From contig QPMI01000203.1 of assembly GCA_004431415.1 (NCBI GenBank), positions 1 to 64,000 of the forward strand: a DNA stretch of 64,000 nucleotides, given 5' to 3'. This document shows, in pieces, positions 6,501 through 58,739 of the stretch; position 1 is the stretch's first letter, and the number at the start of each line of letters is the position of its first letter. Origin of the DNA: Cyanophora paradoxa CCMP329. Lineage: Eukaryota; Plantae; Glaucophyta. A model generated the notes under the pieces. It ran no database searches, had not been told where the DNA came from, and saw only the letters and a program-made list of their open reading frames with translations. A program made the translations under genes and the position numbers.

Positions 6501-9500
6501 AGTGGGAGCAGACGGGGGCGTACGCGGGGTCGCCCCCCTCGCTCGTCGCCCGCCTCGCCTTCCTCTACGGGGACACCCTCATCCCCTCCCAGCCCGCCCC
6601 CGACGAGCTCGCCCAGGCCGCCCGCTCCGCCCAGGCCGCCGCCTCCGCCGCCCACGCCGCTGGCAAGCGCTACGCCGGCCAGGCCGCCGCCCACGCCGCC
6701 GCCGCCGCCCCGGGCTCCCCCGGCGCCCATGCCGCCTCCGCCCCGCTCGGCTCGCCTGGCCCCGCCGCCGGCGCCGGGGCGGGGAAGGAGGGCGAGGAGG
6801 GGACGGAGTGGCAGCGGTTCACGCGGGAGGCGAGCGGGGGCAGCGTGTGGATCCGGCGGTACGCGTCGCGGGAGCTGGAGCTGCGGCGGCTGCTGCGCAA
6901 CCTGCGGCCGTACCGGATCTCGGGGGACCGCTTCTTCTTCGCGGAGGGGGAGGCGCTGCAGGCGATGCAGTTCCTGTACGGGATGCGGGAGCGCTTCGCG
7001 GAGGCGTGGCAGCTCGAGGGGAACGAGGCCCTCGCGCACTACCGCTTCGCCGAGGAGCCGCTGCGCGTCGAGGCCCACGTGCAGCTCGTCGAGGCCAACT
7101 TCGCCGTCCGCTTCCGCGCCGTCTCCTCCGCCGAGCCGGCCGGCGTGCCCCTCCGCACCCTCGGCGACCTCGCCGTCCGCGAGAACAGGCCCTTCTTCCG
7201 CAAGCGCGCCCCGCCGGGCCCTCCTCGCCCCCCCGCCCCCCTCACCGGCCCGCAGCGCCCAGACGGGCCTCTGGTCGCCCTTCTCCCCGCGCGCCGTCAC
7301 CGCCGTCTACTCCCTCTTCGGCACGGAGGTCAGCGAGGGTGCGCCGCCCCGCCGCCCCTCCCGGGCTGCGGCTCGGGCCGAGGCGGGGCAGTCGGGGACG
7401 AGACGGTGGCACCGGCGGCGCGGCGGGCGTACCAGCTGCCGGGGATTGTGGAGGCCCTCGAGGCGGCCGGCGTCCGCATGGCGCGCCCCGCCGCCGCGCG
7501 CGGGGGCCCGCGGGGCGGGTGACGCCGCGCAGGTGTACGACGAGGCGTCGCGGGAGTTCCTCGACCTGCTGCACGCCCGCCGCTCCCAGATCGAGGCCGA
7601 GGACGAGGCGCCCCCGGGGGGCCACCCACGCCTCCTCGCCCCGCTGCCCCCGATGCCCGAGGGCCTCACCTGCACCCTCCGCGAGTACCAGGCCCGCCCT
7701 CCCCCGCCCCCCGCGCCCCGCCCGCACCCCCGCGCGGGGCGGCGACGTGCGGAGCAGGCGCAAGGGGTCGGCTGGATCCGCTTCCTCGGGCGCTACGGCC
7801 TTGGCGGCGTCCTCGCCGACGACATGGGCCCGTCCCCGCCCGCCCCCCGCCCCACCCGCCGCGCCCGGGGCGAGGCGGGGGGCGGGCAGGGCTGGGGAAG
7901 ACGGTGCAGACGCTGGCGACACTGCTGGCGCACTACAGCGACTTCCCCGACTCGCCCCCCTCGCTCGTCGTCGTGCCGACCTCCGTCGTCTACAACTGGC
8001 AGCACGAGGCGGCGCGCTTCACGCCCTCGCTGCGCGTGGCAATCCTCGCGGGGCAGGAGCGGCACGCGGTGCTCGGCCACTTCCTCGAGGGGGCCGGGGC
8101 GCCGGTGGCGGCGGCGCCGGGGCCGGAGGCGGGGGCGGGGGCGGGGGACGTGGACGCCGTGCTGGCGGGCGAGGGCGGCCCCGAGGCCCCCGCGGAGGAG
8201 GACGACGCCGCCGACGCCTCCCTCGCCGACGGCCCGCCCGCCCCGTCCCGCCCCGCCCCGCACGCCCCGCCCCCTCACCGCCCCGCAGCCGCCTACGAGG
8301 AGGAGGAGGAGGGGGCCGGCCCGCAGCGCCGCCGGGGCCGCCGCGCGAAGCAGACGATCCTGCAGGGGCTCCTGGAGAGCGACTGGGCACGTCGCGGGCT
8401 GCGGCCGCAGGTGGGAGGGGGCGGGGGAGGGCGGGCGCGGGGCCGGCTCAGGGCCGGCGCAGGTCTACTTCACGACGTACGGCGTCGTCCGGCGCGACCT
8501 GCCCCGCCTCCGCCGCCACCTCTGGTCCCCCGCCCGCCCCCCCGCCCCCTGCCGGCCGGCGGGAGCGGGGCGCTGAGGGCGGGGGCAGGTCGTACGTGAT
8601 CCTGGACGAGGCGCAGGCGATCAAGAACCCGGACTCGGCGACGTCGACGGCGGTGAAGGGCCTGCGCTTCCTCCACGCCCTCGCCCTCTCGGGGACGCCC
8701 ATCGAGAACCGCCTCCTCGAGCTCTACTCCCTCTTCGACTTCCTCATGCCCGGCTTCCTCGGCTCCTCCCGCCGCGCCTTCCAGGACCAGTACGAGAAGC
8801 CCATCGTCCTCTACAACGACCCCCAGGCCCGCCCACCCCCGCCCCCGCCCTCCCCGCCACGGCCTGACGGGGCGGGGGCGGGCAGGTGCGGGGCCAGCTG
8901 CGGAAGCGGGTGCGGCCGTTCGTTCTGCGGCGGGTGAAGGAGGAGGTGGCAAAGGACCTGCCGCCCAAGACCGACATCGTCCTCCGCGTCGACCTCACCC
9001 CGCGCCAGCGCTACCTCTACGAGCAGGCCCGCCCCGCCCGCCCCGCCCCACGCCCCACCCGGCGAACGCGGGGCGTGCGGGCGCAGATGAGGGAGAAGAC
9101 GTGGGAGCAGCTGCGGGCGGTGATCCGGGCGAAGGGTTCCGTGCAGGCGGCGCAGGCGACGGTGCTGACCGCGCTCATGAAGCTGCGCCAGCTCTGCGAC
9201 GACCCCCGCCTCGTCGATCCCCACGGCCGCGTCCTTCCCAAGGCCCGCCCCCGCCCCCGCCCCCGCCCCCGCCCCTTACCCCCGCCGCCAGGCCATGCGC
9301 GCCGCCGCGCCGCCACTGCGCCCGGGCGGGGGCCGGGGCCGGGGCGGCGGGTGGCGGAGGAGGAGCCGGAGTGGGCGGCGGAGCTGCAGGCGGGGGCGGG
9401 CGAGGGGGTGCCCTACGCGGAGCGCGACAGCGGCAAGCTGCAGGCCCTCCTCGAGGCGCGTCGCCCAGTGCCAGCCGGGCGGCGCGGCGCGCGGCCGCCG

Positions 9501-10057: not shown

Positions 10058-10394
10058 GCCCCGCCCCCGCCCCCCGGACGCCCCGCCCCTGCGCGGCTCT
10101 CGATCGGCGACATGCCCGTTCGATCCGACGGCCCTGCCAGCCATGCGGCCGAGCTCCTCCGCAAACGGCACTTCAGAATATGTTCTTCATTCAAAGACAT
10201 CATTCACTGATTTGCGACAGAACTCTTGCACTACTCTGTATCTAGAGCTAGACCTGCGATGGTCCACCGATCTGCATAACGACCTTCCAGCAGGCTAATG
10301 GTGTGGTCGGGGCTTGGAACTCTTTGCCTCGTTCATTTGGTTAACTAGAACTACCGCCGTAGTGCTCGTATACGGTCCTCCGATATCTATGGTG

Positions 10395-11502
10395 GGAGCT
10401 CGCCGCCCCGTCTAGGCTATCAGTAGTCCTCCATCGCGGAGGGGGCATCGTCGCGTCTCCTCTTCGGGCCCCTGCAGAGACCGAGCCCCATGAGCGTAGG
10501 CCAGCAGAGAGAACGCGGGGCGCTGCGCACCCGTCCCACGACTCGGCTTTCCTCCGGTTGGGGGCGCTCGCCGCCGGCCGGTAGAAGAATGACGCCCCGG
10601 TCACCTGGCAGACGTACTCGCCGTTCGGCAGCAGTGTCTGAGCGGCCGTCAGCACGCGCGATAAGAGCGCGGGGCGAGCGCGAGCATTCACCTTGCAACC
10701 GCTGGCCACGTCGCACACGTGCACGGCTCCAGTAGCCACCTCGCGCCACACTGAGCGAGAGACCAGTCAGCCCTCGCTGCCAGGATCTGCGCGCTTGCAT
10801 CCGCGGACCGTTCCCGAAGACTTTTAAGTAGCCCGAGGGGGCATCGGCGAGAGACGAGCTGCTGCTCCCGCTGCACGAGCGGGAAAGCACGCTGCAAGTG
10901 CCAGCAACCGTCGGGTGGGCATTGCGCGCTTGCATCGCTGATCGGTCAGTGGAGCGAAAGCTAGCTAGGGCTTCGTGCGCCCGGGAACCGCCGCTCTTCG
11001 ATCTCCCCGATGTTGCGCTCGGCTGAGGCGAGACGAAGACTTTTCCGACCGAGGATCTCTGGTGCGCGACAGATGTCTTGTCACGTCGGGCGGGAACCGC
11101 GCCTGGGCCGCTTGCTTTGAGGCAAACGATCCTGGGGCCGTCGCTGAGTGCGAGAGGCTTTTCTGAGGGCTGGGGGCGTCGAGGGGAGCGAGCTGGGTCG
11201 AACTGCCGGGGTACCGAGTGCTGACAACCCGGGGTAGCACGGCAGCGCTAGCGCCGCAGCTCTGCAGGGGCAAGCGATCGTTCCTGTGCTCTGATTCGAG
11301 CGCCTTCAGGGGTCGCATCGTCCGCGTGACCGTGCTCGACGAGTTCTGGCATCATGGCATGGCGGACGAGGAAGCCCGCCTAGCTGCATGGAGGAAGCAG
11401 CTAGCTAGAACAGGAGGAGGACGATGACATGTTCGCGGACCGTCGGACCCCTCGCCTGGCTACGCCGCGGCCGCGGTGTATACGTACGCATCGATATCAG
11501 CG
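10395..11502 (+). pseudogene. Diverged ~1.1-kb direct duplicate of 56038-57108 (small Cys/His gene plus truncated 5' end of CCDC13)
   Basis: Colinear high similarity to 56038-57108 including introns. The CCDC13 portion is frameshifted (MADEEARLAAWRKQLAR..) and dissolves into palindrome-rich sequence after 11502. Confidence 0.92.
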
Positions 11503-11810
11503 AGGATCCGGAGCCTAGGCCTCGCGATCGGAGCCTCGGATTCGGAGGGGCGCACCGTATACGTAGTACTGCCGCGCCGGCATTCTCGGGCGAGTGTGGC
11601 GCGGCACTGCGGCAGGCCTGATCATGAGCCGCTGAGCATGATCATGAGCTCGAGGCCTAGCCGGCGCCTATAGTATATACGTAGCTATAGGAGAGAGAGA
11701 GACTCAGAAATTGAAATTACTACGACTCGGCGATTCAGTAATAGTTGCTCAATGCGCATGCAGAACTAACTTAGTAATTCATGATCACACAAGTTCGAAT
11801 TCATAGGGTT

Positions 11811-12093
11811 GTCAGAAGGACCAGGTTTCCGGTACAGATGAACATGCTCGTGCGTGCTGCGCAGCGTAGGCAAGCTGGCAGCGCAGGCGGGCAGAGCTGG
11901 TGTGTCGTGACTCGTGAACAGGTGCAGGGTACAAGTGTGTCACCCGGGGCGTGAGCCCGGGAGGGGTACATGAAAAGTAGTGGGGGTCCAATCGGCGCAC
12001 TCAATGCGAGCGCTGCGGAGACTAAGGCCAAGCACTGCGAGTAGCGCGACTCGGGGTGCCGGCTCCTGACGGCATAAAGCCGTGAGGCAATAG
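11811..12093 (-). repeat. 3' LTR (283 bp)
   Basis: Identical by eye to 25520-25802; minus-strand end ...TTCTGACA (CA completed at 11810). Confidence 0.9.
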
Positions 12094-12440
12094 CTCCGCG
12101 TGTTCCTCGTCGGCACGTCCTCGTGCCGCCCGAGGGAGGCCAGGAAGCAGCCGGAAGGGGCCGGCCAAGGGGTGAAGAGGGTGATCATGATAGCAGGAAG
12201 TGGCAGGGTCCAGAGCCGAACGGGTGATCAGCCCGCGGCTTCAACTGTGCAACCCAATCAGCGCCCAAGGAAGGGGAGCAATCCAGGAGGTGTGCGACCA
12301 ACGCGGGTCGGACACACTGAATGGAACAGCTACAAGAAAAGGTTCCCAGCCCGCTGCTCCGGTTGAGCAACGGGAAAACTGGGGGTAGGTCCGATGAGGA
12401 CCCTCCGTCGCTGGAGCGACGGCCAGCCAACCACCACTGT

Positions 12441-12767: not shown

Positions 12768-14420
12768 CTAGGCGAAGTCGTGCTTCGGCCAGCCTACAAC
12801 ATGGAGCTGTACGCTCTCTTCCTGCTCAGACTCCACGGAGTCGTCGTCGCTGTCCTCCTCGGCCGGGCGGCCCTCCGAGTGAGGCTCGTCGTCACGCAGG
12901 ATCGGCGGATCCTCCATCTGCTGGTCACCATCCGCGTCCAAATGTACCGGAGGCGGAGGAGCAGGTTCAGGGGCACGCCGTCGAGGCCGACCAGGCTTCG
13001 GATCCTCGGCGAAATTATCGGGGCGGTCGTAGTAAGGGATGATGTTGTCGACATGCACCACAACGTCCATTGAACGATGCATCCGAGACGACGGGTCGCC
13101 GCATACAGTGTAGAGGTAGCCGTGAGAGAAGACCTCCACAACCACGTACGGGCCGGTCCAGCCGTTGCGGGTACCGTGCTTCATGACGTTGGTTGCCTTC
13201 GCACTCTCGCTCCAGCAAAGCACCTTGTCGCCCGGCACGAAAATCTGACGAGGTTCGTTGCCGGTGCCGTAGCGAAGAAGCTTCTGGTTGTACATCTTCC
13301 GATGGGCCTTGACCGCCTCGGCAACGCTTGACGCCGCCCACGCGACAGCCAGCGCGTACTCCGCGTACGCGTAAGGCTCGCCAAAGGGTTCACGCTGAAC
13401 CAGATCCAAACGGAGGTCCCCGGGCAGCACCAGCTCGCGTCCATGGTGAAGCGTAGCCGGAGAGAAGCCGGTCGCCGCGTGGATCGTAGTGCGCAGCGCG
13501 AAGAGCACACGGTAGTGGTAGCTATAGTACGGCCAGTAGACGTTGTCGTGCTTGTCTTCGGCACAGAGCGCGAATTCGAAGATGAGCCGCTTGTACACTC
13601 CGACGAGTCGTTCGGCACCGCCGTTGGTCGACTGATGAGAGACACCAGTGTAGATGAGCCGCATGCCCTGCGCGCAGCTTGGTCCAGAACTTGCCCCAAG
13701 GAGTGTTTGGCTTGAAAACCGTGCCGTTGTCAGTGAGGTAACGTTTGGGCGTGCCGTTCGAGGACTGAATGCTCTGTGCAGCCCATTCCATTTCCGTGCC
13801 GTCAGCCTCCGTGAGCATGACGATCTCTGGATACTTGGTGTACGCGTCGATGTCGATCAGCACTTGCGTGAAGCGGTGAGGGGCATCTTTGGCGTGAGGC
13901 ATCGGGCAGAGATCAGCTTGACGCAGGTCGCCAGGGTGCCGTGATTCGATGATCATGTGCGCATGCTGCACTCGAGGCCGGTGCTTGGCCTTCGCCAACT
14001 GGCAGTGATGACAGGTACGAACGTAGCGGTGCACCATGTTCGTCATACCAGGCCACCAGAAGCGAGTCACGATGCGCCGTGCAACGATGCATATGGACGC
14101 GCCTCGATGAGCCCAGTCATCGTGATACGCCTCCATCACTGCAGCTCTCCAGCGTTGAGGCACTACCACCGGCGAGCCCATCTTTGGGAAGAGGGGTGCG
14201 CGGAGGACCGCGCCGGAGCGGGAGAGGCAGTAGCGTCCCGCCTCGTTCACAAAGCGTTCCCGCGCCTGCCCGCAGCCGAAGCAGGTCTTGTAGACGTCGG
14301 GGTCACGGTTCAGGGCGTCAGCGCCGTGAGTGTGGGCGTAGCAACGTGCGAGATTCTCCTTCCGAAGCTTGAACGCGGTGATCATCTGACAGAGCGGGTC
14401 CGTCTTCTGATCTTCAACCA
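12768..14420 (-). pseudogene. Retroelement integrase (frameshift near 13670)
   Basis: HHCC finger YHDDWAHRG..YVRTCHHCQ; catalytic QADL, TDNGTVF, HQSTNGGAER; ATGFSPATL; WTGPYVV (GPY/F motif); no chromodomain seen. Confidence 0.9.
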
Positions 14421-15899
14421 TAGAGGCTCCGTCGACCGTCAGAGGCTGTAGAACAGGTGGTACAGGGACTTCAACCAGTGGCTGAGGCCCCTGCATCCAG
14501 CAGTCGGCGACAGTGGTTTCTGGCGGCAAGTAGGCCGGCTTCGGGGCGTTACGCCCGCCAGTTCGGTCATCCAACGGAGCGACGCCGTCCGTCGAAAACG
14601 GCTCTGCAGGTGGAAGTTCGCGTTCGTTGCCCAGCGTCTCAGGTGGAGTCGGTATCGGGAGGAGAGCCTCGTCGAGTACGTCCATCACGTTGGGAGGCGC
14701 AATGGCGTACCGACCCTTGCGAGACCCCGCACCACGCGTGAGGATAAGGTTCGGGGGACGTGGTGCTTGTGCCTCAAGTTCTTGGCGACGAGTGTCGCGG
14801 CGCTGCTTACGCTGTTCCTTCGAGAGGCGAGGACGCGCCTCGGCTCCGTCAGGATCTGCGTTGTTGCGCACGTTCTCCTCGTGTCGCTGTTGCGCTTGTT
14901 GTTTGAGCCACCGATGTTGGGCCTGCTTCGCAGCTCGATGGCGATCCTCCGCCCTGCGTCGAGGCTGCTTGTTGCCCTGCTGCCCCGCGAAGGCAGGTGA
15001 CGCCGAGGGCGCGGGAGAAGTCGCTTGAGCAGGTTCTCCATCCGTCGCGTCCGTCAGGTCTCCGACTGAGCTGTTCGGCGAAAGCGGTGGATCAGCCTCT
15101 CCGTCGCGCTCCTGCAGAGCGGGTTCGTGCTGGCGTCCGTCGAGGTGGCGTTGCGCCTCCTGCTGCCAGTAGCTCTCGATCTCATGCTGAATGCCGCCGG
15201 GGATCCGGAGCTGGGGAGGCGGAAGAAGGTTCCCGATCGGATCCGCGTCAGGCAGCACCGGCTTGCGAGGCTCGGTGGCTGAGGGGCGGTTTCGGGAAGG
15301 GTGCAAGCGAGGTCGGCCGCGAGGTCGTCCACGAGGTTGTCCACGAGGTCGCCCGCGCAGTGTACCCCTCCCCCTCCCATGGTTTCCCGAGTCGCGAGTC
15401 CCGTCGCGCGTGGTGTTGTCATGCGCGGGCGAGCTCCGCTGTTCCTCAGAGTGATGTCCCGCCCGTCCAGGGAGATCGGCCTCGGCGCGCGAGGGCGAGC
15501 TCCGCTGTTCCTCAGACGAAAGTTCCTCGTCGTCAGCGTCGGAGAACTCCGCGGGATCCACCTCCGAAGTCACGTCCTCGGCATCGTCCATCGCCTGCTC
15601 CTCTGGATTGCGGCGAGCGCGCTGTGGCGGTGAGTTGGGCGAGCTACGTGGCTCGGCCAATGTCACTGGTCGGCGTCGCTTTGTTCCAGGTGCAGGAGGT
15701 GCCCATGCCCGCCCGTCGAGGCCGGCGGCCGCGATGGATGTCGTAGGCTCGGTCGTCACGGGGACGAGCGTGCCGTAGATCTCCGTCGGGTCGTCGGGAT
15801 CGCCGCTGCGGGGTACCGAGTGTCCGTGAGCCCCATTGGGCAAGTCGGTAGTGAGGTCCGATCCGTCCGCCGCCCCAGGCTCGTAGATCGGATGCGTAC

Positions 15900-17335
15900 G
15901 AGCCATGCGCGACTCGAAGTCGGCGACAACGTTGGTCGAGCCCGGCCTGTACTCGATCGTGTAGTTGAAGCCTTGCATGACGAGCGCCGCGCGTGAGAGC
16001 GCCTTGTTCGCCAGGAGTTCTTGCGACTTCAGCCACTGCAGAGGCGAGTGGTCCGTGCGGATGGTAAACGGGTGCCCGCAGTCGAAGTAGTGTCGCCACG
16101 TGTTGACGCGTACGGCCCACATGACCGCGATGCATTCGCCTTCCGTCGGGGAGCTGTACCTCGCCTCCGTGGCCGTCAGGGTACGGCTAATGAAGGCAAT
16201 TGGTCGTTCCCGGCTGTCAGAGTCGGCCTGCATGAGCGCCGCGCCCATTGCTCGCAGGCTCCAATCCGTGTAGATGATGAACGGCTTGGAAAAGTCGGGG
16301 AGCATGAGCACGATGTCGTCGCACATGACCTTCTTGAGGTCCGCGAGTGCGTCGCTGGCTTCTGGCGTCCACTGAAGTTGCGTCGTGTCCGCTAGCTTCG
16401 CTGCGTGAATCAGGTCACGGAGCGGGAGCTCGCGTCGCGTGTAGTTGCGGATGAAGCGCCTGTAGAAACCAGTCATGCCGAGGAAGCTGCGCATGTGCTC
16501 GACGGTCTGCAGTTCGCGTTCGGTAATCTTGGAGATCACCTCCACCTTCTTCGTGTCCATGCGAACGCCTTGCGCGCTGACACGGTGACCGAGAAGGTCG
16601 ATCTCGCGGACCATGAAGTGACACTTGCTCGGTTTCAGCTTGAGGTTGCCCCGAGCAAGCGCCGCGAAGAAGGCCTTGAGATCGATGAGGTGGTGGAGAG
16701 GAGGTCCCCGAGCACTGAACTGACCGCCCGGCAGAATGCTGACGGAGCAGACTTGAGCCGAAGGGGGTGCACACCCATTTCCAGGCTCCCCATGGCAGGA
16801 GGAAAGTGGTGTAGTCACGAGAGGCTTCTTCGAGGCCGAGTTGCCAAAATCCGCTCAGGCAGTCGCCAACACTAGTACTGAAGATGGAGGAGCCTTGCAG
16901 ACGTTCGAGTTGATCGTCAATGCGGGGAAGCGGGAAGACGTCGCCTTCGATCAAGTTGTTGAGCCGTCGGTAGTCGACGCAGAAGCGCATCGTGCCGTCC
17001 TTCTTGGGCGCCAGCACCACGTGCACGGGACTGCCGTATCCAGCCTGCGAGGGCTCGATGAGGCCGTCCTTCAGCAGCTGTTCGATAGTCGCCTTGGCCG
17101 CCTTCTCCGCCGGGGGAGAGAGCCGCCGAGGGACTGTATAGAGGGGCAGCCGCTTGGGGTTGACACCTGGCAGTAGACGAATCGAGTTCGTGTACTTGAG
17201 AAGGTTGCAAGGATCAAGAACTTTGGCAAAGCATCTCGCTTGTTCGTGCACATGTACAAGGCTTTGGAAAGTGTCCGTCGTGAGGTTCAGCGCCCGAAGC
17301 ATGTAGTCGGAAGAGAGAGGTGTCGTCTGTGGCAC
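15900..17335 (-). pseudogene. Retroelement reverse transcriptase + RNase H (disrupted)
   Basis: LLKDGLIEPSQAGYGSP..KKDGTMRFCVDYRRLN..FPLPRIDD..SGFWQL..TTFLLPWG; LKLKPSKC..LLGHRVS..SFLGMTGFYRRFI..PDFSKPFIIYTDWS..IRTDHSPLQWL..YRPGSTNVVAD. 1-nt deletion after TPFG, and the YxDD segment is missing. Confidence 0.92.
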
Positions 17336-25519: not shown

Positions 25520-25802
25520 GTCAGAAGGACCAGGTTTCCGGTACAGATGAACATGCTCGTGCGTGCTGCGCAGCGTAGGCAAGCTGGCAGCGCAGGCGGG
25601 CAGAGCTGGTGTGTCGTGACTCGTGAACAGGTGCAGGGTACAAGTGTGTCACCCGGGGCGTGAGCCCGGGAGGGGTACATGAAAAGTAGTGGGGGTCCAA
25701 TCGGCGCACTCAATGCGAGCGCTGCGGAGACTAAGGCCAAGCACTGCGAGTAGCGCGACTCGGGGTGCCGGCTCCTGACGGCATAAAGCCGTGAGGCAAT
25801 AG
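25520..25802 (-). repeat. 5' LTR (283 bp)
   Basis: Identical to 11811-12093; lacks the terminal A of the CA end and is not followed by a TGG-type PBS. Confidence 0.9.
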
Positions 25803-26174
25803 TTGATTTTGAATAAGCTTGAAGCCTGCAATAAAAATGTGACTCGGTGAAAAGTTGAAAAACGCGGAGATCTAGACTCTGCAATAAGATCTACACGCAG
25901 ATGAGTCCGACCGGGACGGTCATGATCACGTCGTCCACCTTGGTCCAACTTGGCAAGCCTTGAAGCCGGACAATTTGGCAACTTGGCAATCCAACACTGC
26001 GACACTGTGACAATCCGCGCTCGAGGTCCGACGGTCTAAGCCCAGAGAAATACGGAGTACGTGTAATAGCTTCTACTGCCAGCGGCTGATCGAATATCGT
26101 GGCAGGAACTTGAAAGCAAAACAATTAAGTACGTATCCGGGCTCGAGAAGTCTTGCGAATGTCTCGCCAGCGCA

Positions 26175-28388: not shown

Positions 28389-28709
28389 TCTAGGCACGCC
28401 CGCGAGACGGGCCCACCTCGACGCGAACGGCCCGGCGGCGTGACGACGTCGACCGTCGCTCCCGCGGTTTTTCCCGCACGATGGCGGGGCGAGCGCGTAC
28501 CGTAGCACGCGTGCGATGCCGTTTGAGCAGAAGGCGTCACGACAACGGCGCCCGGCTAGCCGTGAGGCTTGCAATTGATCATGATCATGACGGCTGGACG
28601 TCCACCGTCGTCCAGGGCCCGTGGGGTACAGTATGTTTGATCCTGTTCCCCGCGCTGGCCCCCCGCGCGCCTCACGCCGGCGCCGGCAAATATAGGTCTA
28701 TAGCTAGCG

Positions 28710-29330
28710 AGATGCACTGCGGCACTGTGGCACAGATCTAGAGTCTAGCGGTGCCCGACATTGCACGTCCGTATTTGGACACGTCACGGCGTACTACGGT
28801 ACTAAAACGCAGGTCCGGGCTACTAGGCTACAAGTGTGGGAATGTACACTGCGGCCGCCCGGCGGCCGCGGCCGCGGGCCCAACCCACCAGCGAGCTGGC
28901 CGGCCCGGCGGCCGGGCCCTGCGTGGCCCCCTATATAGCTAAGCTTAAGGAGAGTAATGCGCCTCCCCGCGGACACTCTGGCTAGCTAAATAGCTACATG
29001 TGTCCGCATGCACAGCGTGGTGCTGCATAGCGTCTTGTGGCGGCGGGGGTCGCCTCGGGGCGGTGGCGGGAGCCCCTACAGGGCCTTGGGGGGGCCCGAC
29101 ATGGAGTCAGCCTGCGGTGGGCGCGAAGATTAAGCTAAGACGTCCTAGGGGTTTGTGGTGTTGGCCATGGGCCATGTTCTAGATGATCGTAATCGTAATT
29201 CTTAGCTCCCCTGGGCTTTCCTCCATGTCTAGCTGATCGCAATCGTAATTCTGAGTATCTTAGCTTGGTCTAGATGAGATCGTAATCGTAATTCTAGATC
29301 TAGATGAGATCGTAATCGTATAGCTCCCTG
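28710..29330 (+). repeat. Dispersed repeat family B, copy 1, with adjoining ATCGTAATC-type degenerate minisatellite
   Basis: 28780-29128 is the reverse complement of 35310-35607; also homologous to 50190-50430. Confidence 0.88.
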
Positions 29331-31001: not shown

Positions 31002-32349
31002 ATGCAAGGGCTCGAGCGCTATGCAAAGGCGCACAAAGTCGGCGAGGGCACGTACGGCAACGTCTTCCTGGCCACCGACAAGCTGACCGGGCGTACCGTC
31101 GCGCTGAAGAAGATCAAGGCTGGCGACGTCAAGGAGGGTGTAAATTTCACCGCGCTACGGGAAATAAAGCTGCTGCAGGAGCTTCGCCACCCGAACGTGG
31201 TCGAGGTACTGCTGACTGTTCCCAGCGCTCGCCCCCGTTGAACCCGCGCCGGGAACAGCTCCTGGACGTATTCTCGCGAAATGGGAGCGTGTACCTCGTA
31301 TTCGAGTTCCTGGAAACTGATCTCGACGCGGTGATCCGGGACAGCTCGCTCATCTTGTATGAAGCCGACATCAAGGCTTACATGCTGATGCTGATGCGTG
31401 GTGTCCTGGCTTGTCATGATTCCTGGATCCTTCACAGGGTGCTGCCTGTCCGCCATGGGCGTTCTTCAGTTCACAAATGCCGTTCCCTTTCGTCAGGATC
31501 TGAAACCAGACAATCTTTTGATTGCTCCTGATGGGCAGCTCAAGATTGCGGACTTCGGTTTAGCTCGCATGTTTGGCAGCCCAGACCGGAACCTCTCCAA
31601 CCAAGTTGTTACAAGGTTTTTATTTGCGCGTGTCCCCCCATGCATAAACCCAAGTGCAAATCAAGCGCAGGTGGTACAGGGCCCCAGAGCTGTTTTTTGG
31701 TGCAAAAAAGTATGGGGCCGCGGTGGACATGTGGGCAGTCGGTTGCATATTCGCTGAGCTAATGCTTCGGTGCGATCTGTGCACATGCTAACATGAATGG
31801 TTTTGTACTTTCTGATTCGCATGAACAGGGTCCCTTATTTTCCTGGAGAAAGTGACATCGATCAGCTTGCGAAAATCTTTGCAGCTCTTGGCACCCCGAC
31901 AGATGCAGATTGGCCGGTGCTGTCAATGTCCCTCGGCAGTAGCCCATTCCATTCATCGCATGATTCGATACTCAGGGCATGCGCGAGTTGCCGGGCTATG
32001 TGGAATTCGAAGAGTTTCGCGGCACACCTTTTCGGATCCTTTTCAAGGCAGCCTCTGATCAGGCCCTGGATCTTCTTGGTCGCCTCTTGACATACAATCC
32101 GGCGAAGAGGATAACTGCAGCTGAGGTTAGCCCTCCACTCTCATCGGTATTATCAATGCTTCAACTCACGCAAAACAGGCCCTGCAACACCCCTACTTCG
32201 CAGTAGCACCAATGCCAACCCCTGCGGACAGGCTTCCACGTCCCAAGAAAACTGCGAGCCAGCCGGTAGAGGCCAGGAAACCTAAATCTCCAAGCTCCCG
32301 GGCCAGTGCAGGCACCGGGAATACCCCCAGAAAGGCTCTCAATTTTTAG
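31002..32349 (+). CDS. CDK7: CDK-activating kinase CDK7/CDKD, multi-exon
   Basis: [33 protein letters not shown]|[25 protein letters not shown]|[24 protein letters not shown]; TAG at 32347-32349. Confidence 0.93.
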
Positions 32350-32553: not shown

Positions 32554-32963
32554 TGCGTTCAGCGTAGACAGATCTAGCTAGCTGTGAACTACGCCTGTCT
32601 GGGTTACACGTAGGAAGGTGCGGCCCTCGCCGTTGCCGGCCCGGCCGTTCCCTCCCGAGACCCGTAAGGGGAGTAACGCTCCACCCCCGCACAGCCTAGG
32701 CCGCGCGCGTGTCGTGCGCAGCATCGCGTCGTCGTTCTTGGGCGGTGGGAGTTCCTGCAGGCCCGGCGGGGCCGGGACCCGTCGGTAGCCTGCGGGGCCG
32801 ATGCGGCGCACGCGCGGAGGGGGGTCGGTCACTGAGTCAGATCGAAATTGATCGGAAATCGAAATCGAAGGCGCGCACTCGGGGAAAGCGCGAAAGCGCG
32901 ATCCCTCCCTGGTCGATTCTGCAGGGCGGCGGAAGCGCGCAGAGGGGGGTCAGACAGCGCACG
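32554..32963 (+). repeat. Dispersed repeat family A, copy 1
   Basis: Highly similar to 49668-50096 (direct) and to 33522-33707 (inverted, internally deleted). Confidence 0.92.
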
Positions 32964-33521: not shown

Positions 33522-33707
33522 CCGAGTGCGCGCCTTCGATTTCGATTTCCGATCAATCGGCCCTAGGCTGTGCGGGGGTGGAGCGTTACTCCCCTTACGG
33601 GTCTCGGGGGGAACGGCCGGGCCGGCAACGGCGAGGGCTGCACCTCCCTACGTGTAACCCAGACAGGCGTAGTTCACAGCTAGCTAGCTCTGTCTACGCT
33701 GAACGCA
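33522..33707 (-). repeat. Repeat family A, inverted copy with internal deletion
   Basis: 33559-33707 is the reverse complement of 32554-32703; 33522-33556 is the reverse complement of ~32848-32882. Confidence 0.9.
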
Positions 33708-34959: not shown

Positions 34960-35627
34960 TCTAGATCTGCGATTACTAGCTTTGATCTGCGACTACGATT
35001 AGCTGGGGCGTCCTTGATCTAGACTCTGAGATCTGCTCGTGATAAGGACGTCTTAGCTTTTATCTGCGATTACGATCAGGGGTTGGACCGAAACTTGGGG
35101 CTCCCGCCCAAGACGCGCCCCAGCGGCAGGTGCGCACCGCGCAGGTCATGCGGGCATCCTTGATCTAGATCTGCGATTACGATCGTAATTACTATCGGCG
35201 GCTGAGCCCGGCGGCAGGCGCTCCTCTGGGCGGGAGGCTCGTCGATCGAGTGCGCCCCCGTTTGCTTTGATTTGGATCTCAAGACCTTTCGATTACGATC
35301 TGACCCCTCTTCGCGCCCACCGCAGGCTGACTCCATGTCGGGCCCCCCCAAGGCCCTGTAGGGGCTCCCGCCACCGCCCCGAGGCGACCCCCGCCGCCAC
35401 AAGACGCTATGCAGCACCACGCTGTGCATGCGGACACATGTAGCTATTTAGCTAGCCAGAGTGTCCGCGGGGAGGCGCATTACTCTCCTTAGGGGGCCAC
35501 GCAGGGCCCGGCCGGCCAGTTCGCTGGTGGGCTGGGCCCGCGGCCGCGGCGGCCGCAGTGTATATTCCCACACTTGTAGCCCGGACCTGCGTTTTAGTAC
35601 GTGTCCGAATGCGAAGGTACAAATGCT
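34960..35627 (-). repeat. Repeat family B, copy 2 (inverted relative to copy 1), with GATTACGAT-type motifs
   Basis: Reverse complement of 28758-29128; aggacgtcttagctt at ~35045 pairs with aagctaagacgtcct at ~29132. Confidence 0.88.
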
Positions 35628-41028: not shown

Positions 41029-41411
41029 ACCTGGCCTGCGATGCCACTAGTCTACCTAGCTCTTTTCCTTTCAATGCAGTTGCAATTTCTCCAGAACAGG
41101 GTGTGATGCAGCTGGGCGGGCATGGTTTGCAGCATTGAGGGGGACGAGACAGAACTAGCTTGAATCAATAATCTGATCATGATTGCATATTACTAGTAAT
41201 CAATAATCAGCTGCAGTTATAGCTTTATGTAGTGCATGCACACGTGCACGTGCACGTGAGAGAGAGCAACGAAAGCCTTGAAGCCTTCAGCTTAACTCAT
41301 GATGAGTGATGCCTTGAAGTTCTAGATCTGCAGCTGTGTATATCATAGCACAAACGCGTACGTATACATATACATGCACTCAGTGACTAGCTATATAGTA
41401 CGGTTTATAAT

Positions 41412-42975: not shown

Positions 42976-43395
42976 CCTCCGCGCGCGGCCCGCACTTGCC
43001 GCACTTGCACAGGGCCGGGCGCGGTCTGCTAGTTACGTACTGCAGCTGTGCATGCGCGAGCCGCTGAGCTATACTGCATATATATGTACGTATACGTTCA
43101 TACTATGATACTTAAACGTATACGTAGCACCACAACAATGCGTATATCTAGATCGACGCCTACGCCTGCGGCGCCGGCGCCCCCGCGCGCGCGCGCGTCG
43201 CGCGACCGGCAACTGCTGGCTCGGGCAAATACAATATACCCTCAGCGCACCAAGCCCCGGGTACAAGCGCGTTTGTTTTTGGAGGCCGGCTAGCGCAGCA
43301 GCAAGCACCGCACACTAGCGGCGCGGTGTAGCAGACTAGCGGACTAGCAGTGCACCGCAACCGGCCGCCCCAGCGAGTAGCAGCGCACAGAAGCC

Positions 43396-49667: not shown

Positions 49668-50096
49668 TGCGTTCAGCGTAGACAGAGCTAGCTAGCTAGC
49701 TGTGAACTACGCCTGTCTGGGTTACACGTAGGAAGGTGCGGCCCTCGCCGTTGCCGGCCCGGCCGTTCCCCCCGAGACCCGTAAGGGGAGTAACGCTCCA
49801 CCCCCGCACAGCCTAAGCCGCGCGCGTGTCGTGTGCAGCATCGCATCGTCGTTCTTGGGCGGTGGGAGTTCCTGCAGGCCCGGCGGGGCCGGGACCCGTC
49901 GGTAGCCTGCGGGGCCCGGCGGCCGATGCGGCGCACGCGCGGAGGGGGGTCAGATCGAAATTGAAGCGCCCTGAAATCGAAATCGAATTTTGAAGGCACG
50001 CACTCGGGGAACTTCGGAAAGCGCGAAAGCGCGATCCCTCCCTGGTCGATTCTGCAGGGCGGCGGAAGCGCGCAGAGGGGGGTCAGGCAGCGCACG
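49668..50096 (+). repeat. Repeat family A, copy 3
   Basis: Highly similar to 32554-32963. Confidence 0.92.
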
Positions 50097-50189: not shown

Positions 50190-50450
50190 TTGTAGCTTAG
50201 CTACATATAGTGTCCGCGGGAAGGCGCATTACTCTCCTTTAATAATGTACATGTAGGGGGCCACGCAGGGCTCGGCTGGCCGGCCAGCTTGCGCATGCTG
50301 GCGGGCTATACTAGATGATAGGCTTAAGCTTGCGGCGACAGTGGCCGCGGCCGCAGTGTACCGGCCGTACTACGGTAGTAGTACATTTATACCGTAGCTA
50401 TATAGTACATCAAGTGTGCCGCAGTGCATGCCGCAGTGCACTAGTACTGC
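50190..50450 (-). repeat. Repeat family B, copy 3 (heavily eroded)
   Basis: agtgtccgcgggaaggcgcattactctcctt..agggggccacgcaggg..ggccgcagtgta matches 35460-35562, interrupted by short insertions. Confidence 0.8.
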
Positions 50451-50808
50451 GGCACGTTAACGTTTCATTTAAACGCGTAGAATTCGAATTTCGAAGCTTA
50501 TAAGCGGAGTTGACGTCGACGGGCCAAGTACGCCGTGAGACGTATATAATACGTACGTATACTATGATACGTATACACGAGTAGCTTTTCCAATACTAAA
50601 AACGAATACCGTAGTACCCGGCCCCAAGCTGCCGATTCTGCGCCAATTTGACGTCGGCGCCGACTAGTACTCTGGTGAATTCGAAGCGTGCGCATGCGTA
50701 TTGGATGTGCACGCAGTGCGCCGACGTCGCGCTCACAATCCTTCCACGCGCACGTAGTCCGTATACGGGCCGGCGCGCGCATAAGCTTTCAAGGCGTCGA
50801 CGTACGAG

Positions 50809-52885: not shown

Positions 52886-53366
52886 CCTCAGGCGCTTCCT
52901 TCCAGGCACTGGCGCGTGCGCGTCTCGCGCCGGAGAACGTGCAAGCGCGCCCGGTGCTCAGCTGCAGTGGCACCCGCTTGTCGCTTCTCGTCCGCGCCGG
53001 CCGTCGCCGGCGCGCTCCCACGACGATCTCGCGCGGCTGCGGGGCCCTTCCGACTTCCTTCGCCGCGTAATGCTGTTCGCCGAACCGATGCTTCAATTGC
53101 CTTGGACAACGCGGGCACCGCGGCCGGCAACTGGCGGAGGCTTGACGGCTGGACGGCTAGCCGAGGGTACACTCGTTCTGTGTGATTCTTGTCCCCCGTC
53201 GCCTCGCCGGCAGCGTAGGCAGCTTGCCCCGCCCACCCAGCAGAGGTGAGCTAGATGCATGTGCAGACGCGCATCATTCCGGCATCGCGGCGTGGGCGCC
53301 CGTGCGAACGTCCACATCCGGCGCGCTCTGACGCCTTCCGTTGCAGACTCTGTTGAGCGGGAGGAA

Positions 53367-54944: not shown

Positions 54945-54979
<35 letters not shown>

Positions 54980-55858: not shown

Positions 55859-56037
55859 GACTGCCCCACACAATTCGTTTTCTTAGTTATGACTGCCACC
55901 CACAGAGCTCCTTGTATGCCAACGATGCGAAACTTTTTTTGATTTCGTTTGGTTCTCCTACCATAACGCTATCACCCGGCGTTCGTTACTCGTACGCTGC
56001 TCCCATGTTTTATGGAAGGGCCTTGCCGCCCGTGCTA

Positions 56038-56700
56038 GGAGCTCGCCGCCCCGCCTCGACTATCAGTAGTCCTCCATCGCCGAGGGACCGGCATCGTCGC
56101 GCCTCCTCTTCGGGCCCCTGCAGAGACCGAGCCCCATGAGCGTGGGCCAGCAGGGAGAACGCGGGGCGCTGCGCACTCGTCCCACGACTCGGCTTTCCTC
56201 CGGTTGGGGGCGCTCGCCGCCGGCCGGTAGAAGAATGACGCCCCGGTCACCTGGCAGACGTACTCGCCGTTCGGCAGCAGTGTCTGAGCGCCGTCAGCAC
56301 GCGCGATACGAGTGCGGGGCGAGCGCGAGCATTCACCTTGCAGCCGCTGGCAACGTCGCACACGTGCACGGCTCCAGTAGCCACCTCGCGCCACACTGAG
56401 CGAGAAGCCAGTCAGCCCTCGCTGCCAGGATCTGCGCGCTTGCATGCGCGGACCGTTCCCGAAGACTTTCAGGTAGCCCGACGGGGCATCGCCGAGAGAC
56501 GAGCTGCTGCTCCCGCTGCACGAGCGGGAAAGCACGCTGCAAGTGCCAGCAACCGTCGGGTGGGAATTGCGCGCTTGCATCGCTGATCGGCGAGTGGAGC
56601 GAAAGCTAGCTAGGGCCTCTGCGTGCGCCCGGGAACCGCCGCTCTTCGATCTCCCCGATGCTGGGCTCGGCTGAGGCGAGACGAAGACTTTTCCGACCGA
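56038..56700 (-). CDS. Small multi-exon protein with H-x-C-D..C..VC..TG metal-binding motif; boundaries uncertain
   Basis: Spliced [19 protein letters not shown]|[19 protein letters not shown], conserved in the duplicate at 10.4-11.0 kb. Confidence 0.5.
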
Positions 56701-56994
56701 GGATCTCTGGTGTGCGACAGATGTCTTGTCACGTCGGGCGGGAACCGTGCCTGGACCGCTCTTTGGGTCGAACGATGCTGGGGCCTTCGCCGAGTGCGAG
56801 AGGCTTCTCTTAGGGCTGGGGGCGTCGAGAGGAGCGAGCTGGGTCGAACTGCCGGGGTACCGAGTGCTGACGACCCGTTCGGGGTAGCACGGCAGCGCCG
56901 CAGCTTTGCAGGGGCAAGCGATCGTTCCTGTGCCCTGATTCGAGCGCCTTCAGGGGTCGCATCGTCCGCGTGACCGTGCGCGACGAGTTCTGGC

Positions 56995-58739
56995 ATGGCG
57001 GACGAGGAAGCTCGCCTAGCTGCATGGAGGAAGCAGCTAGAACAGGAGGAAGACGATGACATATTCGCGGACCCCTCGCCTGGCTACGCCGCGGCGTACG
57101 CATCAGCGCCGGACGTCGACGACGAGTCTAGCGACGACGATGCCCCACCAGCGTCAGCCCACGGCCAGCGTGGGCGAGGTGCAGGAGCGGGACAGCGCAG
57201 CCCAGAGAGCGCGCCCTCCAAAGGGGCGAGCTCGCATATGGACCCTCGGGTGCGCCGCAGGCCGCCCCACGTTGTCAGCAAAGGGTCAATCGTGCATGCA
57301 GGATGCAAAGATAATATCTCTGTCGAAGAAGAACAGGAACCTTGTAATGGCGCTTGGCAAGGAGCGGGCAAACATTGCAAAGCTGGCGCAGGAGGTGTTC
57401 TTGCTCGCCCTGGGACGCCCACGCCTCCTAATCACTCCCCGACACGCAGGTGCAAGTCTTGAAGCAACGCCTAAAATCCTCGGAGGCGGGAGCGAGCAGA
57501 GAGGATGGCGGCGCAAGGACTGGGGAGGACGGTGGGCGGGACGGGCGCCTGGCGGAGGAGGCGAGGGAGCTGCGCGAGAAGTACGCGGGGGCAAACACAA
57601 AGCTGAACGAAATGCGGGTGGCTCAGCAGCAACTGCGCGAGGAGCTGCGCCGCACGCAACGCGCGCTGCAGCGCGAGGTCGGCGACGACGTGCCCCTCCA
57701 GAAGGTCATCGACGAGGGCTCCTCCTGGCGCGGCCGCGCGCAGGAGATATCTCTCTTGAAGACCAAGGTGCACGTGCTGCCACTCCTGCTTCTCGCCTTC
57801 CCGACAGGGACGCAGGTGAAAGAGCTGAAGCGGCAGCTGGAGCAGGCCGAGGCGGGCAGCCCGCGGTCGCCGTCGGGGGAGGGCGCCAGCGGGACGGGCG
57901 CTGTGCGGGCGGGCACCTCGAAGCGTTCGTTTGACGACGTGCACCGGGCGGACCTGGACAGGCGCGAGGCGGACCGGCGCGCGGAGCAGGAGCGTCTGCT
58001 TCTCGAGGGCCGCGCTGCTGCAGAGGAGAACAGCGCGCTGCGGAAGCGGGGGGAGGCCTCCGCCGCCCGCATCAAGGCCCTCGAGAACGAGGTCAAGGCC
58101 CTGAAGCAGAAGGTACTGCGCCCAGCGCCCTGTGCGCGTCGCCTGCCTCCTGAATAAGATTTGTGACCTGCGAGGGCAGCTGCTGGTGGTGCTGGACAAA
58201 ACGGCGAACGACGACCGCCTGATCGCGACGCTAAAGGCCGAGCTAGAGGGCGCGCGGGGGGGAGGCGCCACCGGATCGTCGCAGCCCCGCCGCCCTCGAG
58301 GCTCCTCGTCTCGCGGCACGCCCGACGCAGAGCTCGACTCGCTGCGCAAGGTCCGTGTGACTGGCGGAGTTTCTGACCACAGCCGACGCTGGCGGGCGGG
58401 TTGGCAGGTGGCGAGAGAACAGGAGGCGCAGCTGGATCGACAGGAGCAGGTCCGCCTTGAGCCCGTGAAGCTGGCGGCGTGCTCTGCCGCGTGTCACTGA
58501 TGAGCTAGCAGATCATTCTCTCGCTGCGCGACCAGCTGCAGCGGGCGATGGAGCGCCTGCGCGAAAAGGGGCAGGGGGGCGGCGTAGGCTCGTCCGGCAC
58601 TCGCCCCGAAAGCGCCATGCGCTCCATGCAGGTGCTTCAGGACGCAAACGCCGCAATTCACCCCGCTCACCCTCCTGCGCAGGTCGAGAATGAGCGCCTG
58701 GTGCCCTCTCCGTCCCAGGCCGCCTCCGGCGCCCCGTAA
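56995..58739 (+). CDS. CCDC13: Coiled-coil domain-containing protein 13-like (centriolar satellite), multi-exon
   Basis: DAKIISLSKKNRNL, ALQREVGDDV..SSWRGRAQEISLLKTK, RIKALENEV, LDKTANDDRLIATL. Confidence 0.82.

What the first reader, a model, noticed from the sequence alone, without database searches (positions are those of the whole stretch)
11461..11502. Stereotyped X-revcomp(X)-X 6-nt insertions: a distinctive mutational process acting on neutral DNA
Seen: the intact paralogue (57087-57108) reads gccg-CGG-c-GTA-cgc-ATC-agcg; the decayed copy reads gccg-CGG CCG CGG-t-GTA TAC GTA-cgc-ATC GAT ATC-agcg. That is three separate events in 40 bp, each adding revcomp(X)+X after a trinucleotide X. 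Another lies at ~11245 (AGC to AGC GCT AGC) and one in repeat B at ~28941 (AAG to AAG CTT AAG). X varies freely. Established: cut-and-paste elements that leave hairpins on the donor flanks (hAT, CACTA/En-Spm, Transib/RAG) generate palindromic P-nucleotides, and CACTA elements make 3-bp TSDs. Inference: these are either excision footprints at very high density or the signature of a 3-nt-staggered break with fold-back repair, possibly enriched in duplicated/TE DNA as a genome-defence-like erosion. I do not know a description of this as a dominant genome-wide indel class.
Basis: partly seen in the sequence, partly recalled or inferred. Interest (0 to 1): 0.92.

Follow-up and report, generated by a model that had tools for sequence, protein, structure and literature searches.

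The report
Stereotyped palindrome-writing insertion scars
In this alga's non-coding DNA, most small insertions follow two exact rules (a 3-letter word X becomes X-revcomp(X)-X, or X-C-revcomp(X)-G-X); these look like scars of symmetric hairpin-type break repair, possibly transposon excision, and I found no published description of them.

Summary

- **The first rule.** X-X'-X with |X|=3 occurs 168 times (143 loci) in the window. Dinucleotide shuffles give about 27, and a hexamer-conditioned model gives 45.
- **A second rule, not in the finding as given.** X-C-X'-G-X adds 8 nt and occurs 41 times against 3.4 expected. Its mirror, X-G-X'-C-X, occurs 3 times against 3.1.
- **Only 3-nt units** show either pattern.
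- **Paralogue comparisons.** 24 of about 42 indels belong to these two classes. All nine 2-aa insertions in the window's retroelement copy are X-X'-X.
- **Not an assembly error.** Short-read contigs from four runs (2012 and 2024) match 11306-11840 exactly.
- **Clustering.** 37% of loci lie in six intergenic tracts that make up 2.5% of the window.
- **Organism.** Inferred to be Cyanophora paradoxa. Its genome paper does not mention palindromes.

The dyad symmetry of X-C-X'-G-X points to a two-ended break in which both ends carry the same 3 bp and are processed alike. That is hairpin/P-nucleotide geometry. The most economical source is excision of a transposon with a 3-bp target duplication and 5'-C...G-3' ends (CACTA-like), at about 50%. 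A transposon-independent break-repair process remains open. Genome defence against duplicates is not supported.

First-stage notes on other pieces of this genome report the same two grammars. Those notes are unchecked.

The parts
11244..11252 (.). +6 scar AGC-GCT-AGC; copy B has AGC only
   Evidence: Alignment of copy A with copy B.
11350..11360 (.). +8 scar CAT-C-ATG-G-CAT; copy B has G-CAT-G, so the C is not copied from the flank
11399..11408 (.). +4 CTAG (AG-CT-AG-CT-AG); copy B has AGCTAG
   Evidence: Ambiguous between the same process with a 2-nt unit and simple slippage.
11438..11448 (.). +8 scar GAC-C-GTC-G-GAC
11465..11498 (.). The reported site: three +6 scars (CGG CCG CGG, GTA TAC GTA, ATC GAT ATC) within 34 nt
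   Evidence: Read-derived contigs are identical here.
11438..11802 (.). Hot tract: 17 loci (16 X-X'-X 9-mers, 5 X-C-X'-G-X) in 365 bp of single-copy DNA, ending at the LTR
   Evidence: Contig depth about 86, consistent with single copy.
25868..26036 (.). Hot tract on the other side of the LTR element. Together with 11438-11802 it probably formed one tract before the element inserted
56033..57108 (.). Paralogue B, which lacks all the scars of copy A
13519..17258 (-). Nine copy-specific in-frame +6 scars in the retroelement pol region, at 13519, 13572, 13958, 14087, 15201, 16106, 16871, 17018 and 17250
   Evidence: tblastn of paralogues P0001 and P0002. The majority-copy contig lacks 6 nt at 13519 and at 13571.
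28676..28949 (.). Hot tract inside repeat B copy a. Three +8 scars (28820, 28857, 28901) and two +6 scars (about 28932-28949), against only 3 substitutions in 330 bp relative to copy b
35308..35600 (.). Repeat B copy b, without those scars
49914..50019 (.). Two +8 scars in repeat C copy b: GCC-C-GGC-G-GCC at 49914 and GAA-C-TTC-G-GAA at 50009. Both are absent from copy a (32554-32963)
32829..32839 (.). +8 scar TCA-C-TGA-G-TCA in repeat C copy a, absent from copy b
41174..41388 (.). Hot tract: 7 loci
43040..43181 (.). Hot tract: 6 loci
50246..50697 (.). Hot tract of 17 loci, just upstream of the ORF that starts at 50809

Best explanation
These are repair scars of two-ended DNA breaks in which both ends carry the same 3 bp (X) and both are processed in the same way through a hairpin-type intermediate.

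**Geometry (inferred, derived by hand).**
- Each end is capped as a hairpin and opened 2 nt 3' of the tip. The two 4-nt overhangs then always share one complementary terminal base, because both ends carry X.
- Pairing on that base and filling in gives exactly X-X'-X (+6).
- If each hairpin has one unpaired C at its tip, the same steps give exactly X-C-X'-G-X (+8).

**Most economical source.** Excision of a cut-and-paste transposon that makes 3-bp target-site duplications and has 5'-C...G-3' termini (CACTA/En-Spm-like). The first nick would fall either flush with the element or one nucleotide inside it.

**Accumulation.** Each hop leaves one scar while the number of elements stays constant. Scars therefore pile up where the element prefers to land (intergenic islands) and outnumber elements by orders of magnitude.

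**Shown:** the two products, their 3-nt specificity, their dyad symmetry, their polarity as insertions, their clustering and their presence in reads.

**Inferred:** the hairpin steps and the transposon.
For: 1. **Strict 3-nt unit.** X-X'-X is 6.3x over shuffles and X-C-X'-G-X is 10.6x. Units of 2, 4 and 5 nt show no C/G signature.
2. **Orientation-specific spacers.** C/G 41 against 3.4 expected; G/C 3 against 3.1; C/C 8; G/G 13. The product has the same form on both strands, as expected from two ends treated alike.
3. **The C is not templated by the flank.** The ancestral contexts were G-CAT-G, C-GCC-G and G-GAA-A.
4. **Perfect palindromic junctions with no loop.** This is the hallmark of covalently closed hairpins (P nucleotides). 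hAT, Transib and MULE transposases form such flank hairpins (PMC5499845).
5. **Polarity.** Nine of nine 2-aa insertions of the retroelement copy, relative to two paralogues, are X-X'-X. 24 of about 42 indels across paralogue pairs are of the two classes.
6. **Clustering in intergenic islands** that also received an LTR element, as expected for an insertion preference.
7. **The rate is feasible.** About 9 scars per 4.5 kb at roughly 3-5% divergence corresponds to only about 10^-3 to 10^-2 excisions per genome per generation (my own estimate).
8. **Leads only, untested.** First-stage notes report CACTA elements with 3-bp TSDs elsewhere in this genome.
Against: - No element with 5'-C...G-3' inverted ends and a 3-bp TSD, and no transposase, lies in the 64-kb window. 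Hits equal the null (Pfam).
- No occupied/empty pair links an element to a scar.
- Plant CACTA footprints reported in the literature are short (3-5 bp) and variable (bioRxiv 10.64898/2026.08.24.746626; PMC6379663), not two exact products.
- The by-products expected from ordinary end joining of hairpins are at background level. That precision is unusual for host repair.
- Several events lie within 10-20 nt of each other, at about 1% divergence. This requires extreme local re-insertion.
- Mixed products (C on one side only) are not specifically enriched, so both ends must choose the same nick position.
Confidence: 0.5

Rival explanations
1. A transposon-independent cellular process. An endogenous nuclease, possibly a domesticated transposase, makes 3-nt-staggered double-strand breaks in certain intergenic regions. 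Both ends are filled in, sometimes with one untemplated C (for example by a Rev1-like dCMP transferase or a terminal-transferase activity). They are then converted to palindromic extensions and rejoined, giving the same two products.
For: - The same symmetry and 3-nt evidence as for the main explanation.
- No element in the window.
- Extreme local recurrence: 5-6 events in 125 bp with 3 substitutions in 330 bp.
- 17% of inter-locus gaps are 10 nt or less, against 2.7% for a Poisson process. This fits a recurrently cut site better than repeated landings.
- The near absence of by-products suggests an enzyme-determined rather than a repair-determined outcome.
Against: - No known cellular activity seals filled-in blunt ends into hairpins.
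- A 3-nt stagger is not produced by known eukaryotic topoisomerases or by Spo11 (4 and 2 nt; established knowledge).
- It needs an extra assumption for the constant C.
Confidence: 0.25
2. Replication-based short template switching. The nascent strand copies 3 nt of the complementary or displaced strand and switches back (Löytynoja-Goldman type events, or DNA polymerase delta copying a 2-3-nt displaced flap).
For: - X-X'-X is formally a two-switch product.
- Template-switch mutations are known to create inverted repeats (PMC5453318, PMC7954356).
- Flaps of 2-3 nt are typical of lagging-strand maturation (my knowledge).
Against: - A single nascent strand making two turns gives no reason for C at the first turn and G at the second. 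C/C is 8 and G/C is 3, against C/G at 41.
- The length is fixed at 3 nt, whereas template switches vary widely.
- There is no microhomology requirement, and the junctions are perfect and loopless.
- Events cluster in intergenic tracts rather than genome-wide.
Confidence: 0.1
3. A genome-defence-like process that targets duplicated or transposable-element DNA, analogous to RIP, and erodes copies by palindromic insertions.
For: Polarised examples come from a decayed paralogue and a dead retroelement copy.
Against: - Those are simply the only places where polarity can be read.
- Only one copy of each pair is hit: copy B, repeat B copy b, and P0001/P0002 are clean.
- The 283-bp LTR pair is 100% identical and unhit.
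- The densest tracts are single-copy intergenic DNA.
Confidence: 0.04
4. Not a mutational process at all: chance, microsatellites, selection for palindromic binding sites, or assembly error.
For: 27 of the 195 raw hits are (CG)n or (AT)n runs. GC-only X classes are partly chance.
Against: - After removing microsatellites the excess is more than 20 sd.
- AT-containing X classes are 10-25x enriched.
- Paralogues show the events to be insertions.
- Scars interrupt conserved pol motifs of the retroelement, so they are not selected there.
- Short-read contigs agree with the assembly.
Confidence: 0.02

Closest known systems
Excision footprints of hairpin-forming cut-and-paste transposons (hAT, Transib/RAG, MULE; CACTA/En-Spm with 3-bp TSDs)
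   Same: Both copies of the target duplication are retained, with palindromic nucleotides between them derived from flank hairpins. The 3-bp unit matches CACTA TSDs, and the constant C...G matches CACTA...TAGTG termini.
   Different: There are only two exact products (+6 and +8). The by-product spectrum reported for plant CACTA elements (3-5 bp, multiple variants) is missing. Density reaches tens per kb, so these scars are the main indel class. No element has been linked to any scar here.
P nucleotides at V(D)J coding joints (hairpin opened off-centre)
   Same: Perfect palindromic extension of a DNA end without a loop. An opening 2 nt from the tip reproduces the observed products exactly.
   Different: Germline scars spread through a protist's non-coding DNA. 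Both ends carry an identical 3-bp word. There are no N additions and no nibbling.
Short template-switch mutations and quasipalindrome correction (Löytynoja and Goldman 2017; Walker et al. 2021)
   Same: A nearby sequence is re-inserted as its reverse complement, which creates inverted repeats.
   Different: Fixed 3-nt length, dyad-symmetric C/G spacers, and no need for a pre-existing inverted repeat.
Duplications from filled-in staggered breaks (for example topoisomerase II-linked 2-4-bp duplications)
   Same: The overhang sequence is duplicated on both sides of the break.
   Different: Those are plain tandem duplications (X-X). Here an inverted copy always lies between the two X, and plain X-X is not specially enriched.
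DUP-TRP/INV-DUP structural variants
   Same: The same direct-inverted-direct topology.
   Different: A scale of kilobases to megabases, mediated by inverted repeats. Here the unit is 3 bp.

Membership tests
CACTA/En-Spm excision footprint | [quoted passage not shown] | tested here: met
   X is duplicated and |X|=3 is the only enriched unit.
CACTA/En-Spm excision footprint | Palindromic filler derived from the flanks (hairpin model) | tested here: met
   The filler is exactly revcomp(X), with no loop.
CACTA/En-Spm excision footprint | Resident elements with CACTA...TAGTG inverted ends and 3-bp TSDs, and a Tnp2-type transposase, in the genome | tested here: inconclusive
   None in the 64-kb window: TIR+TSD scans equal the null and no transposase domain was found. 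The rest of the genome could not be read. First-stage notes claim CACTA elements elsewhere, untested.
CACTA/En-Spm excision footprint | An occupied allele and a scarred empty allele at the same site | not testable with these tools
   Needs the whole genome or several strains.
CACTA/En-Spm excision footprint | The footprint spectrum known from plants (short and variable) | tested here: not met
   Two exact products, with by-products at background level. Plants show 3-5 bp and multiple variants (10.64898/2026.08.24.746626; PMC6379663).
PIF/Harbinger footprint | TSD of TAA/TTA | tested here: not met
   0 X-X'-X events with X=TAA/TTA. X is spread over nearly all triplets.
Serial template-switch mutation | Both junctions are made on one nascent strand, with variable copied length | tested here: not met
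   C/G 41 against C/C 8 and G/C 3. The length is fixed at 3.
RIP-like defence against repeats | All copies of a duplicated sequence are hit and single-copy DNA is spared | tested here: not met
   One copy per pair is hit. The hot tracts are single copy.
Assembly or sequencing artefact | Absent from independent read data | tested here: not met
   Contigs from runs X1, X9, X14 and X15 are identical over 11306-11840.

The most novel reading that the evidence does not exclude
A lineage-specific, transposon-independent enzymatic process in a glaucophyte cuts intergenic DNA with a 3-nt stagger. It reseals both ends through hairpin-like intermediates, sometimes with one untemplated C per end. It thereby writes overlapping 6-bp palindromes and acts as the main source of small insertions. 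This would be a mutational signature with no described counterpart.
Probability: 0.25. Interest if true: 0.9.

Novelty: new variant of a known kind. Interest (0 to 1): 0.8.

Why it matters
- **A readable mechanism.** If the pattern holds genome-wide, one mechanistically legible process accounts for over half of the small indels in this alga's neutral DNA. Few mutational signatures reveal their intermediate (two ends, 3-bp stagger, hairpin tip, optional C) this directly.
- **If it is transposon excision.** Footprints rather than elements can then be the main long-term legacy of a cut-and-paste family. The scars would give a fossil record of landing sites.
- **If it is not.** It points to an unknown nuclease or repair pathway in a deep-branching Archaeplastida lineage.
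- **Practical use.** Collapsing the two scar types restores reading frames and homology, as it does for the nine insertions in the pol gene. That would improve annotation and alignment in this genome.

Tried and rejected
- **Rfam scan of the window:** nothing.
- **Protein-atlas search to identify the organism:** uninformative.
- **Ten literature searches** found no description of the pattern in Cyanophora or elsewhere. The C. paradoxa genome paper contains neither 'palindrom' nor 'inverted'.
- **The Volvox Jordan transposon paper** could not be fetched.
- **Scans for inverted-end elements with 3-bp TSDs** (any start, CAC, CA or C): hits equal the null.
- **Collapsing scars downstream of 11502** did not restore homology with copy B. 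The duplication simply ends there.
- **The minus-strand ORFs at 10423-11247 and 56038-56949** are not a conserved coding frame. The frames shift between the copies and substitutions by codon position are 14/6/15. Coding constraint therefore does not explain the scar-free 850 bp of copy A.
- **X-X'-X'-X (+9):** 8 against 0.9 expected, but almost all are GC-rich low complexity.
- **Repeat C ends (TGCGTTCAGCG...)** have no TSD.
- **Introns of the DAHP synthase gene:** 0 events in about 0.8 kb. This is colder than the hot tracts but cannot be told apart from the window background.

Full report
**1. The observation**

The reported sequences are exact. Copy A (10390-11502) aligns with copy B (56033-57108) at 92% identity. 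Relative to B, copy A carries:
- four +6 insertions of the form X-X'-X (X' = reverse complement of X): AGC at 11244, CGG at 11468, GTA at 11478 and ATC at 11490;
- a +4 CTAG;

The other five indels of the pair (1-4 nt) are unremarkable. Homology ends at 11502/57108. Collapsing the scars downstream does not restore it.

**2. Statistics**

- After removing (CG)n and (AT)n runs, the window holds 168 X-X'-X 9-mers at 143 loci.
- Dinucleotide-preserving shuffles give 26.6-28.4, sd 5-7.
- Conditioning on the observed hexamer counts, which is conservative, still gives only 45.
- Control patterns built from the same parts are at expectation: X-X-X' 81 vs 74 and X-X'-X' 60 vs 74.
- Nearly every triplet class contributes. 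AT-containing classes are enriched 10-25 fold. TAA/TTA has none.
- The whole excess of 6-bp palindromes in the window (about 300) is accounted for by these loci.
- One-edit decayed versions are also in excess, 1203 vs 823, so the process has run for a long time.

**3. A second, more informative class**

- Allowing one-nucleotide spacers reveals X-C-X'-G-X (+8 nt): 41 occurrences against 3.2-3.9 expected.
- The mirror arrangement X-G-X'-C-X occurs 3 times against 3.1-3.4, which serves as an internal control. C/C occurs 8 times, G/G 13, A/T 1 and T/A 0.
- The signature exists only for 3-nt X. With 2-nt units C/G (67 vs 43) equals G/C (78 vs 45). With 4-nt units there are none.
- The C is not copied from the flank. 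The ancestral contexts were G-CAT-G, C-GCC-G and G-GAA-A.
- Products with a spacer on one side only are not specifically enriched.
- By-products expected from imprecise hairpin repair sit at the general background ratio of 1.3-1.9. These include X-x3'-X, X-x3'x1'-X, X-x3'x2'x2'x1'-X and X-CG-X (where x1', x2', x3' are the complements of the first, second and third base of X). X-X'-X is at 6.3x and X-C-X'-G-X at 10.6x.

**4. Polarity**

- The window's gypsy-type retroelement copy (pol on the minus strand, 12771-17287) was compared by tblastn with two paralogous proteins, P0001 and P0002, at 95-97% identity.
- It has nine 2-aa insertions, and all nine coincide with X-X'-X sites: 13519, 13572, 13958, 14087, 15201, 16106, 16871, 17018 and 17250.
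- They interrupt otherwise conserved pol segments, so they are insertions here and not deletions elsewhere.
- The multi-copy contig of this family in the read data also lacks 6 nt at 13519 and at 13571. Another copy carries CAC-GTG-CAC where the window has CGC, at 12848.
- Repeat B copy a (28799-29129) has three +8 and two +6 scars within 125 bp relative to copy b. The pair differs by only three substitutions in 330 bp.
- Repeat C has three +8 scars distributed over both copies.
- Altogether 16 (+6) and 8 (+8) of about 42 indels seen in paralogue comparisons belong to the two classes.

**5. Not an artefact**

Logan contigs built from short reads of three runs (two from 2024, one from 2012) span 11306-11840 or more without a single difference or gap. 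A fourth run covers the stretch with two such contigs. That stretch contains the reported site, both +8 scars and most of the hot tract. These runs may come from the sequenced strain itself, so they validate the sequence but say nothing about polymorphism.

The copy-specific scars inside the retroelement are not represented in the contigs. Only the majority variant is. For those scars the evidence is the assembly plus the paralogue comparison.

**6. Distribution**

- The 174 loci of both classes are strongly clustered. 17% of inter-locus gaps are 10 nt or less, against 2.7% for a Poisson process.
- Six tracts of 140-450 bp hold 64 loci. Together they are 1.6 kb, or 2.5% of the window.
- The tracts at 11438-11802 and 25868-26036 abut the two 100%-identical 283-bp terminal repeats of the retroelement (11811-12093 and 25520-25802). 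The element apparently landed inside one pre-existing tract.
- The other tracts lie between genes and next to short repeats.
- Several 2-kb bins have no event.
- The roughly 0.8 kb of introns of the DAHP synthase gene (53346-55855) have none.
- The 850 bp of copy A upstream of 11240 have none either, although they are not a conserved reading frame. Rate heterogeneity is therefore real and not simply due to coding constraint.

**7. Organism**

- The retroelement paralogues and the DAHP synthase model carry EukProt names of the form tig000xxxxx_gNNNN.t1.
- P0121 (tig00000863_g4976.t1) maps onto the window's exons at 97-100%.
- That naming, the GC content (65% here, 67.6% reported) and the roughly 100-Mb read assemblies with a 2012 data set match the Cyanophora paradoxa assembly of Price et al. 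2019 (PMC6704402).
- This is an inference from names, not a tool-stated identity.
- That paper does not contain the words 'palindrom' or 'inverted'.

**8. Mechanism**

*The two-ended break.* The reverse complement of X-C-X'-G-X has the same form. At each junction the C lies on the strand that runs 5'-to-3' into the turn. A single nascent strand making two consecutive template switches gives no reason for C first and G second. Two DNA ends processed identically do. This argues for a double-strand break and against serial template switching.

*What the product requires.* Both ends must carry X: either a filled-in 3-nt stagger or the two copies of a 3-bp target-site duplication. A total of three palindromic nucleotides must lie between them, with no loop. 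That is the property of covalently closed hairpins opened off-centre (P nucleotides; flank hairpins are documented for hAT, Transib/RAG and MULE, PMC5499845).

*The geometry, worked through by hand.*
- Opening both hairpins 2 nt 3' of the tip leaves overhangs ending in x2' (the complement of the middle base of X) and in x2 itself. These always pair, because both ends carry the same X.
- Filling in gives exactly X-X'-X.
- With one unpaired C at each tip, the same steps give exactly X-C-X'-G-X.

*Where the C could come from.* A constant C at the 3' end of each flank is what remains if a transposase nicks one nucleotide inside an element that begins 5'-C and ends G-3'. CACTA elements combine such ends with 3-bp duplications.

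*The rate.* It is modest. About 9 scars per 4.5 kb at a few percent divergence corresponds to roughly 10^-3 to 10^-2 excisions per genome per generation (my estimate). Cut-and-paste movement leaves one scar per hop without increasing the copy number.

I therefore favour excision footprints of a CACTA-like element, at about 0.5.

**9. What speaks against it**

- No such element or transposase is in the window.
- No occupied site has been matched to a scar.
- Plant CACTA footprints in the accessible literature are 3-5 bp and variable (10.64898/2026.08.24.746626; PMC6379663).
- The extreme precision and the very local recurrence fit an enzyme-determined reaction at recurrently cut sites at least as well. 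That is the transposon-independent rival, at about 0.25.
- A defence process directed at duplicates is not supported. One copy per pair is hit, and the densest tracts are single copy.

**10. Relation to the rest of the scan**

First-stage notes on other pieces of this genome report X-X'-X, the NNN-C-revcomp-G-NNN grammar and CACTA elements. I had derived the C/G class from this window before reading those notes. They are unchecked leads, and I could not read those pieces.

**11. Verdict**

This is a real, highly significant, two-product insertion signature that dominates small indels in this window's non-coding DNA. I found no published description. Its geometry is that of hairpin-type footprints at a 3-bp duplication, but its source (transposon or cellular nuclease) is not settled.

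Noticed in passing
window 11811-12093 and 25520-25802: Two 283-bp direct repeats, 100% identical, bracket the gypsy-type retroelement (pol and zinc-knuckle ORFs on the minus strand). No clear target-site duplication is visible. The internal region differs by about 5% from the majority copies, although the terminal repeats are identical.
   Followed up: partly
window 13665-13680: A 7-nt insertion relative to the majority copy creates the 10-nt palindrome CTGCGCGCAG and shifts the pol frame. It fits neither the +6 nor the +8 rule.
   Followed up: partly
window 32170-32185 vs 36757: A one-sided +4 insertion, CAGG, placed before C-CCTG gives CAGG-C-CCTG. This is an odd palindrome with a C at its centre, possibly a single-ended version of the same chemistry.
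   Followed up: no
window 33678, 49686-49697, 11399-11408: (CTAG)n/(AGCT)n runs differ by +4 between repeat copies. This is either the same process with a 2-nt unit or plain slippage.
   Followed up: no
window 53346-55855: A class II DAHP synthase gene with about 8-10 short exons. It matches EukProt tig00000863_g4976.t1 (P0121) at 97-100% per exon, which names the contig of origin.
   Followed up: yes
window 32554-32700 and 33562-33707 (also 49668-49815): A 147-bp unit beginning TGCGTTCAGCGTAGACAG is present as an inverted pair 860 bp apart and as a third copy. It has no target-site duplication and its nature is unknown.
   Followed up: partly
window 8000-8400 and 8800-9400: Read-contig depth is hundreds of times the single-copy level, with many joints. 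The cause is GC-rich low-complexity coding sequence of the Snf2-like gene shared with many loci.
   Followed up: no
window-wide: Within the scars, palindrome centres TA are half as frequent as AT (12% vs 24% of X end positions). C is slightly enriched just before, and G just after, X-X'-X (0.40 vs about 0.31).
   Followed up: no
window 12435-12440: A 6-nt indel relative to other copies of the retroelement (CACTGT) is not of the X-X'-X type.
   Followed up: no
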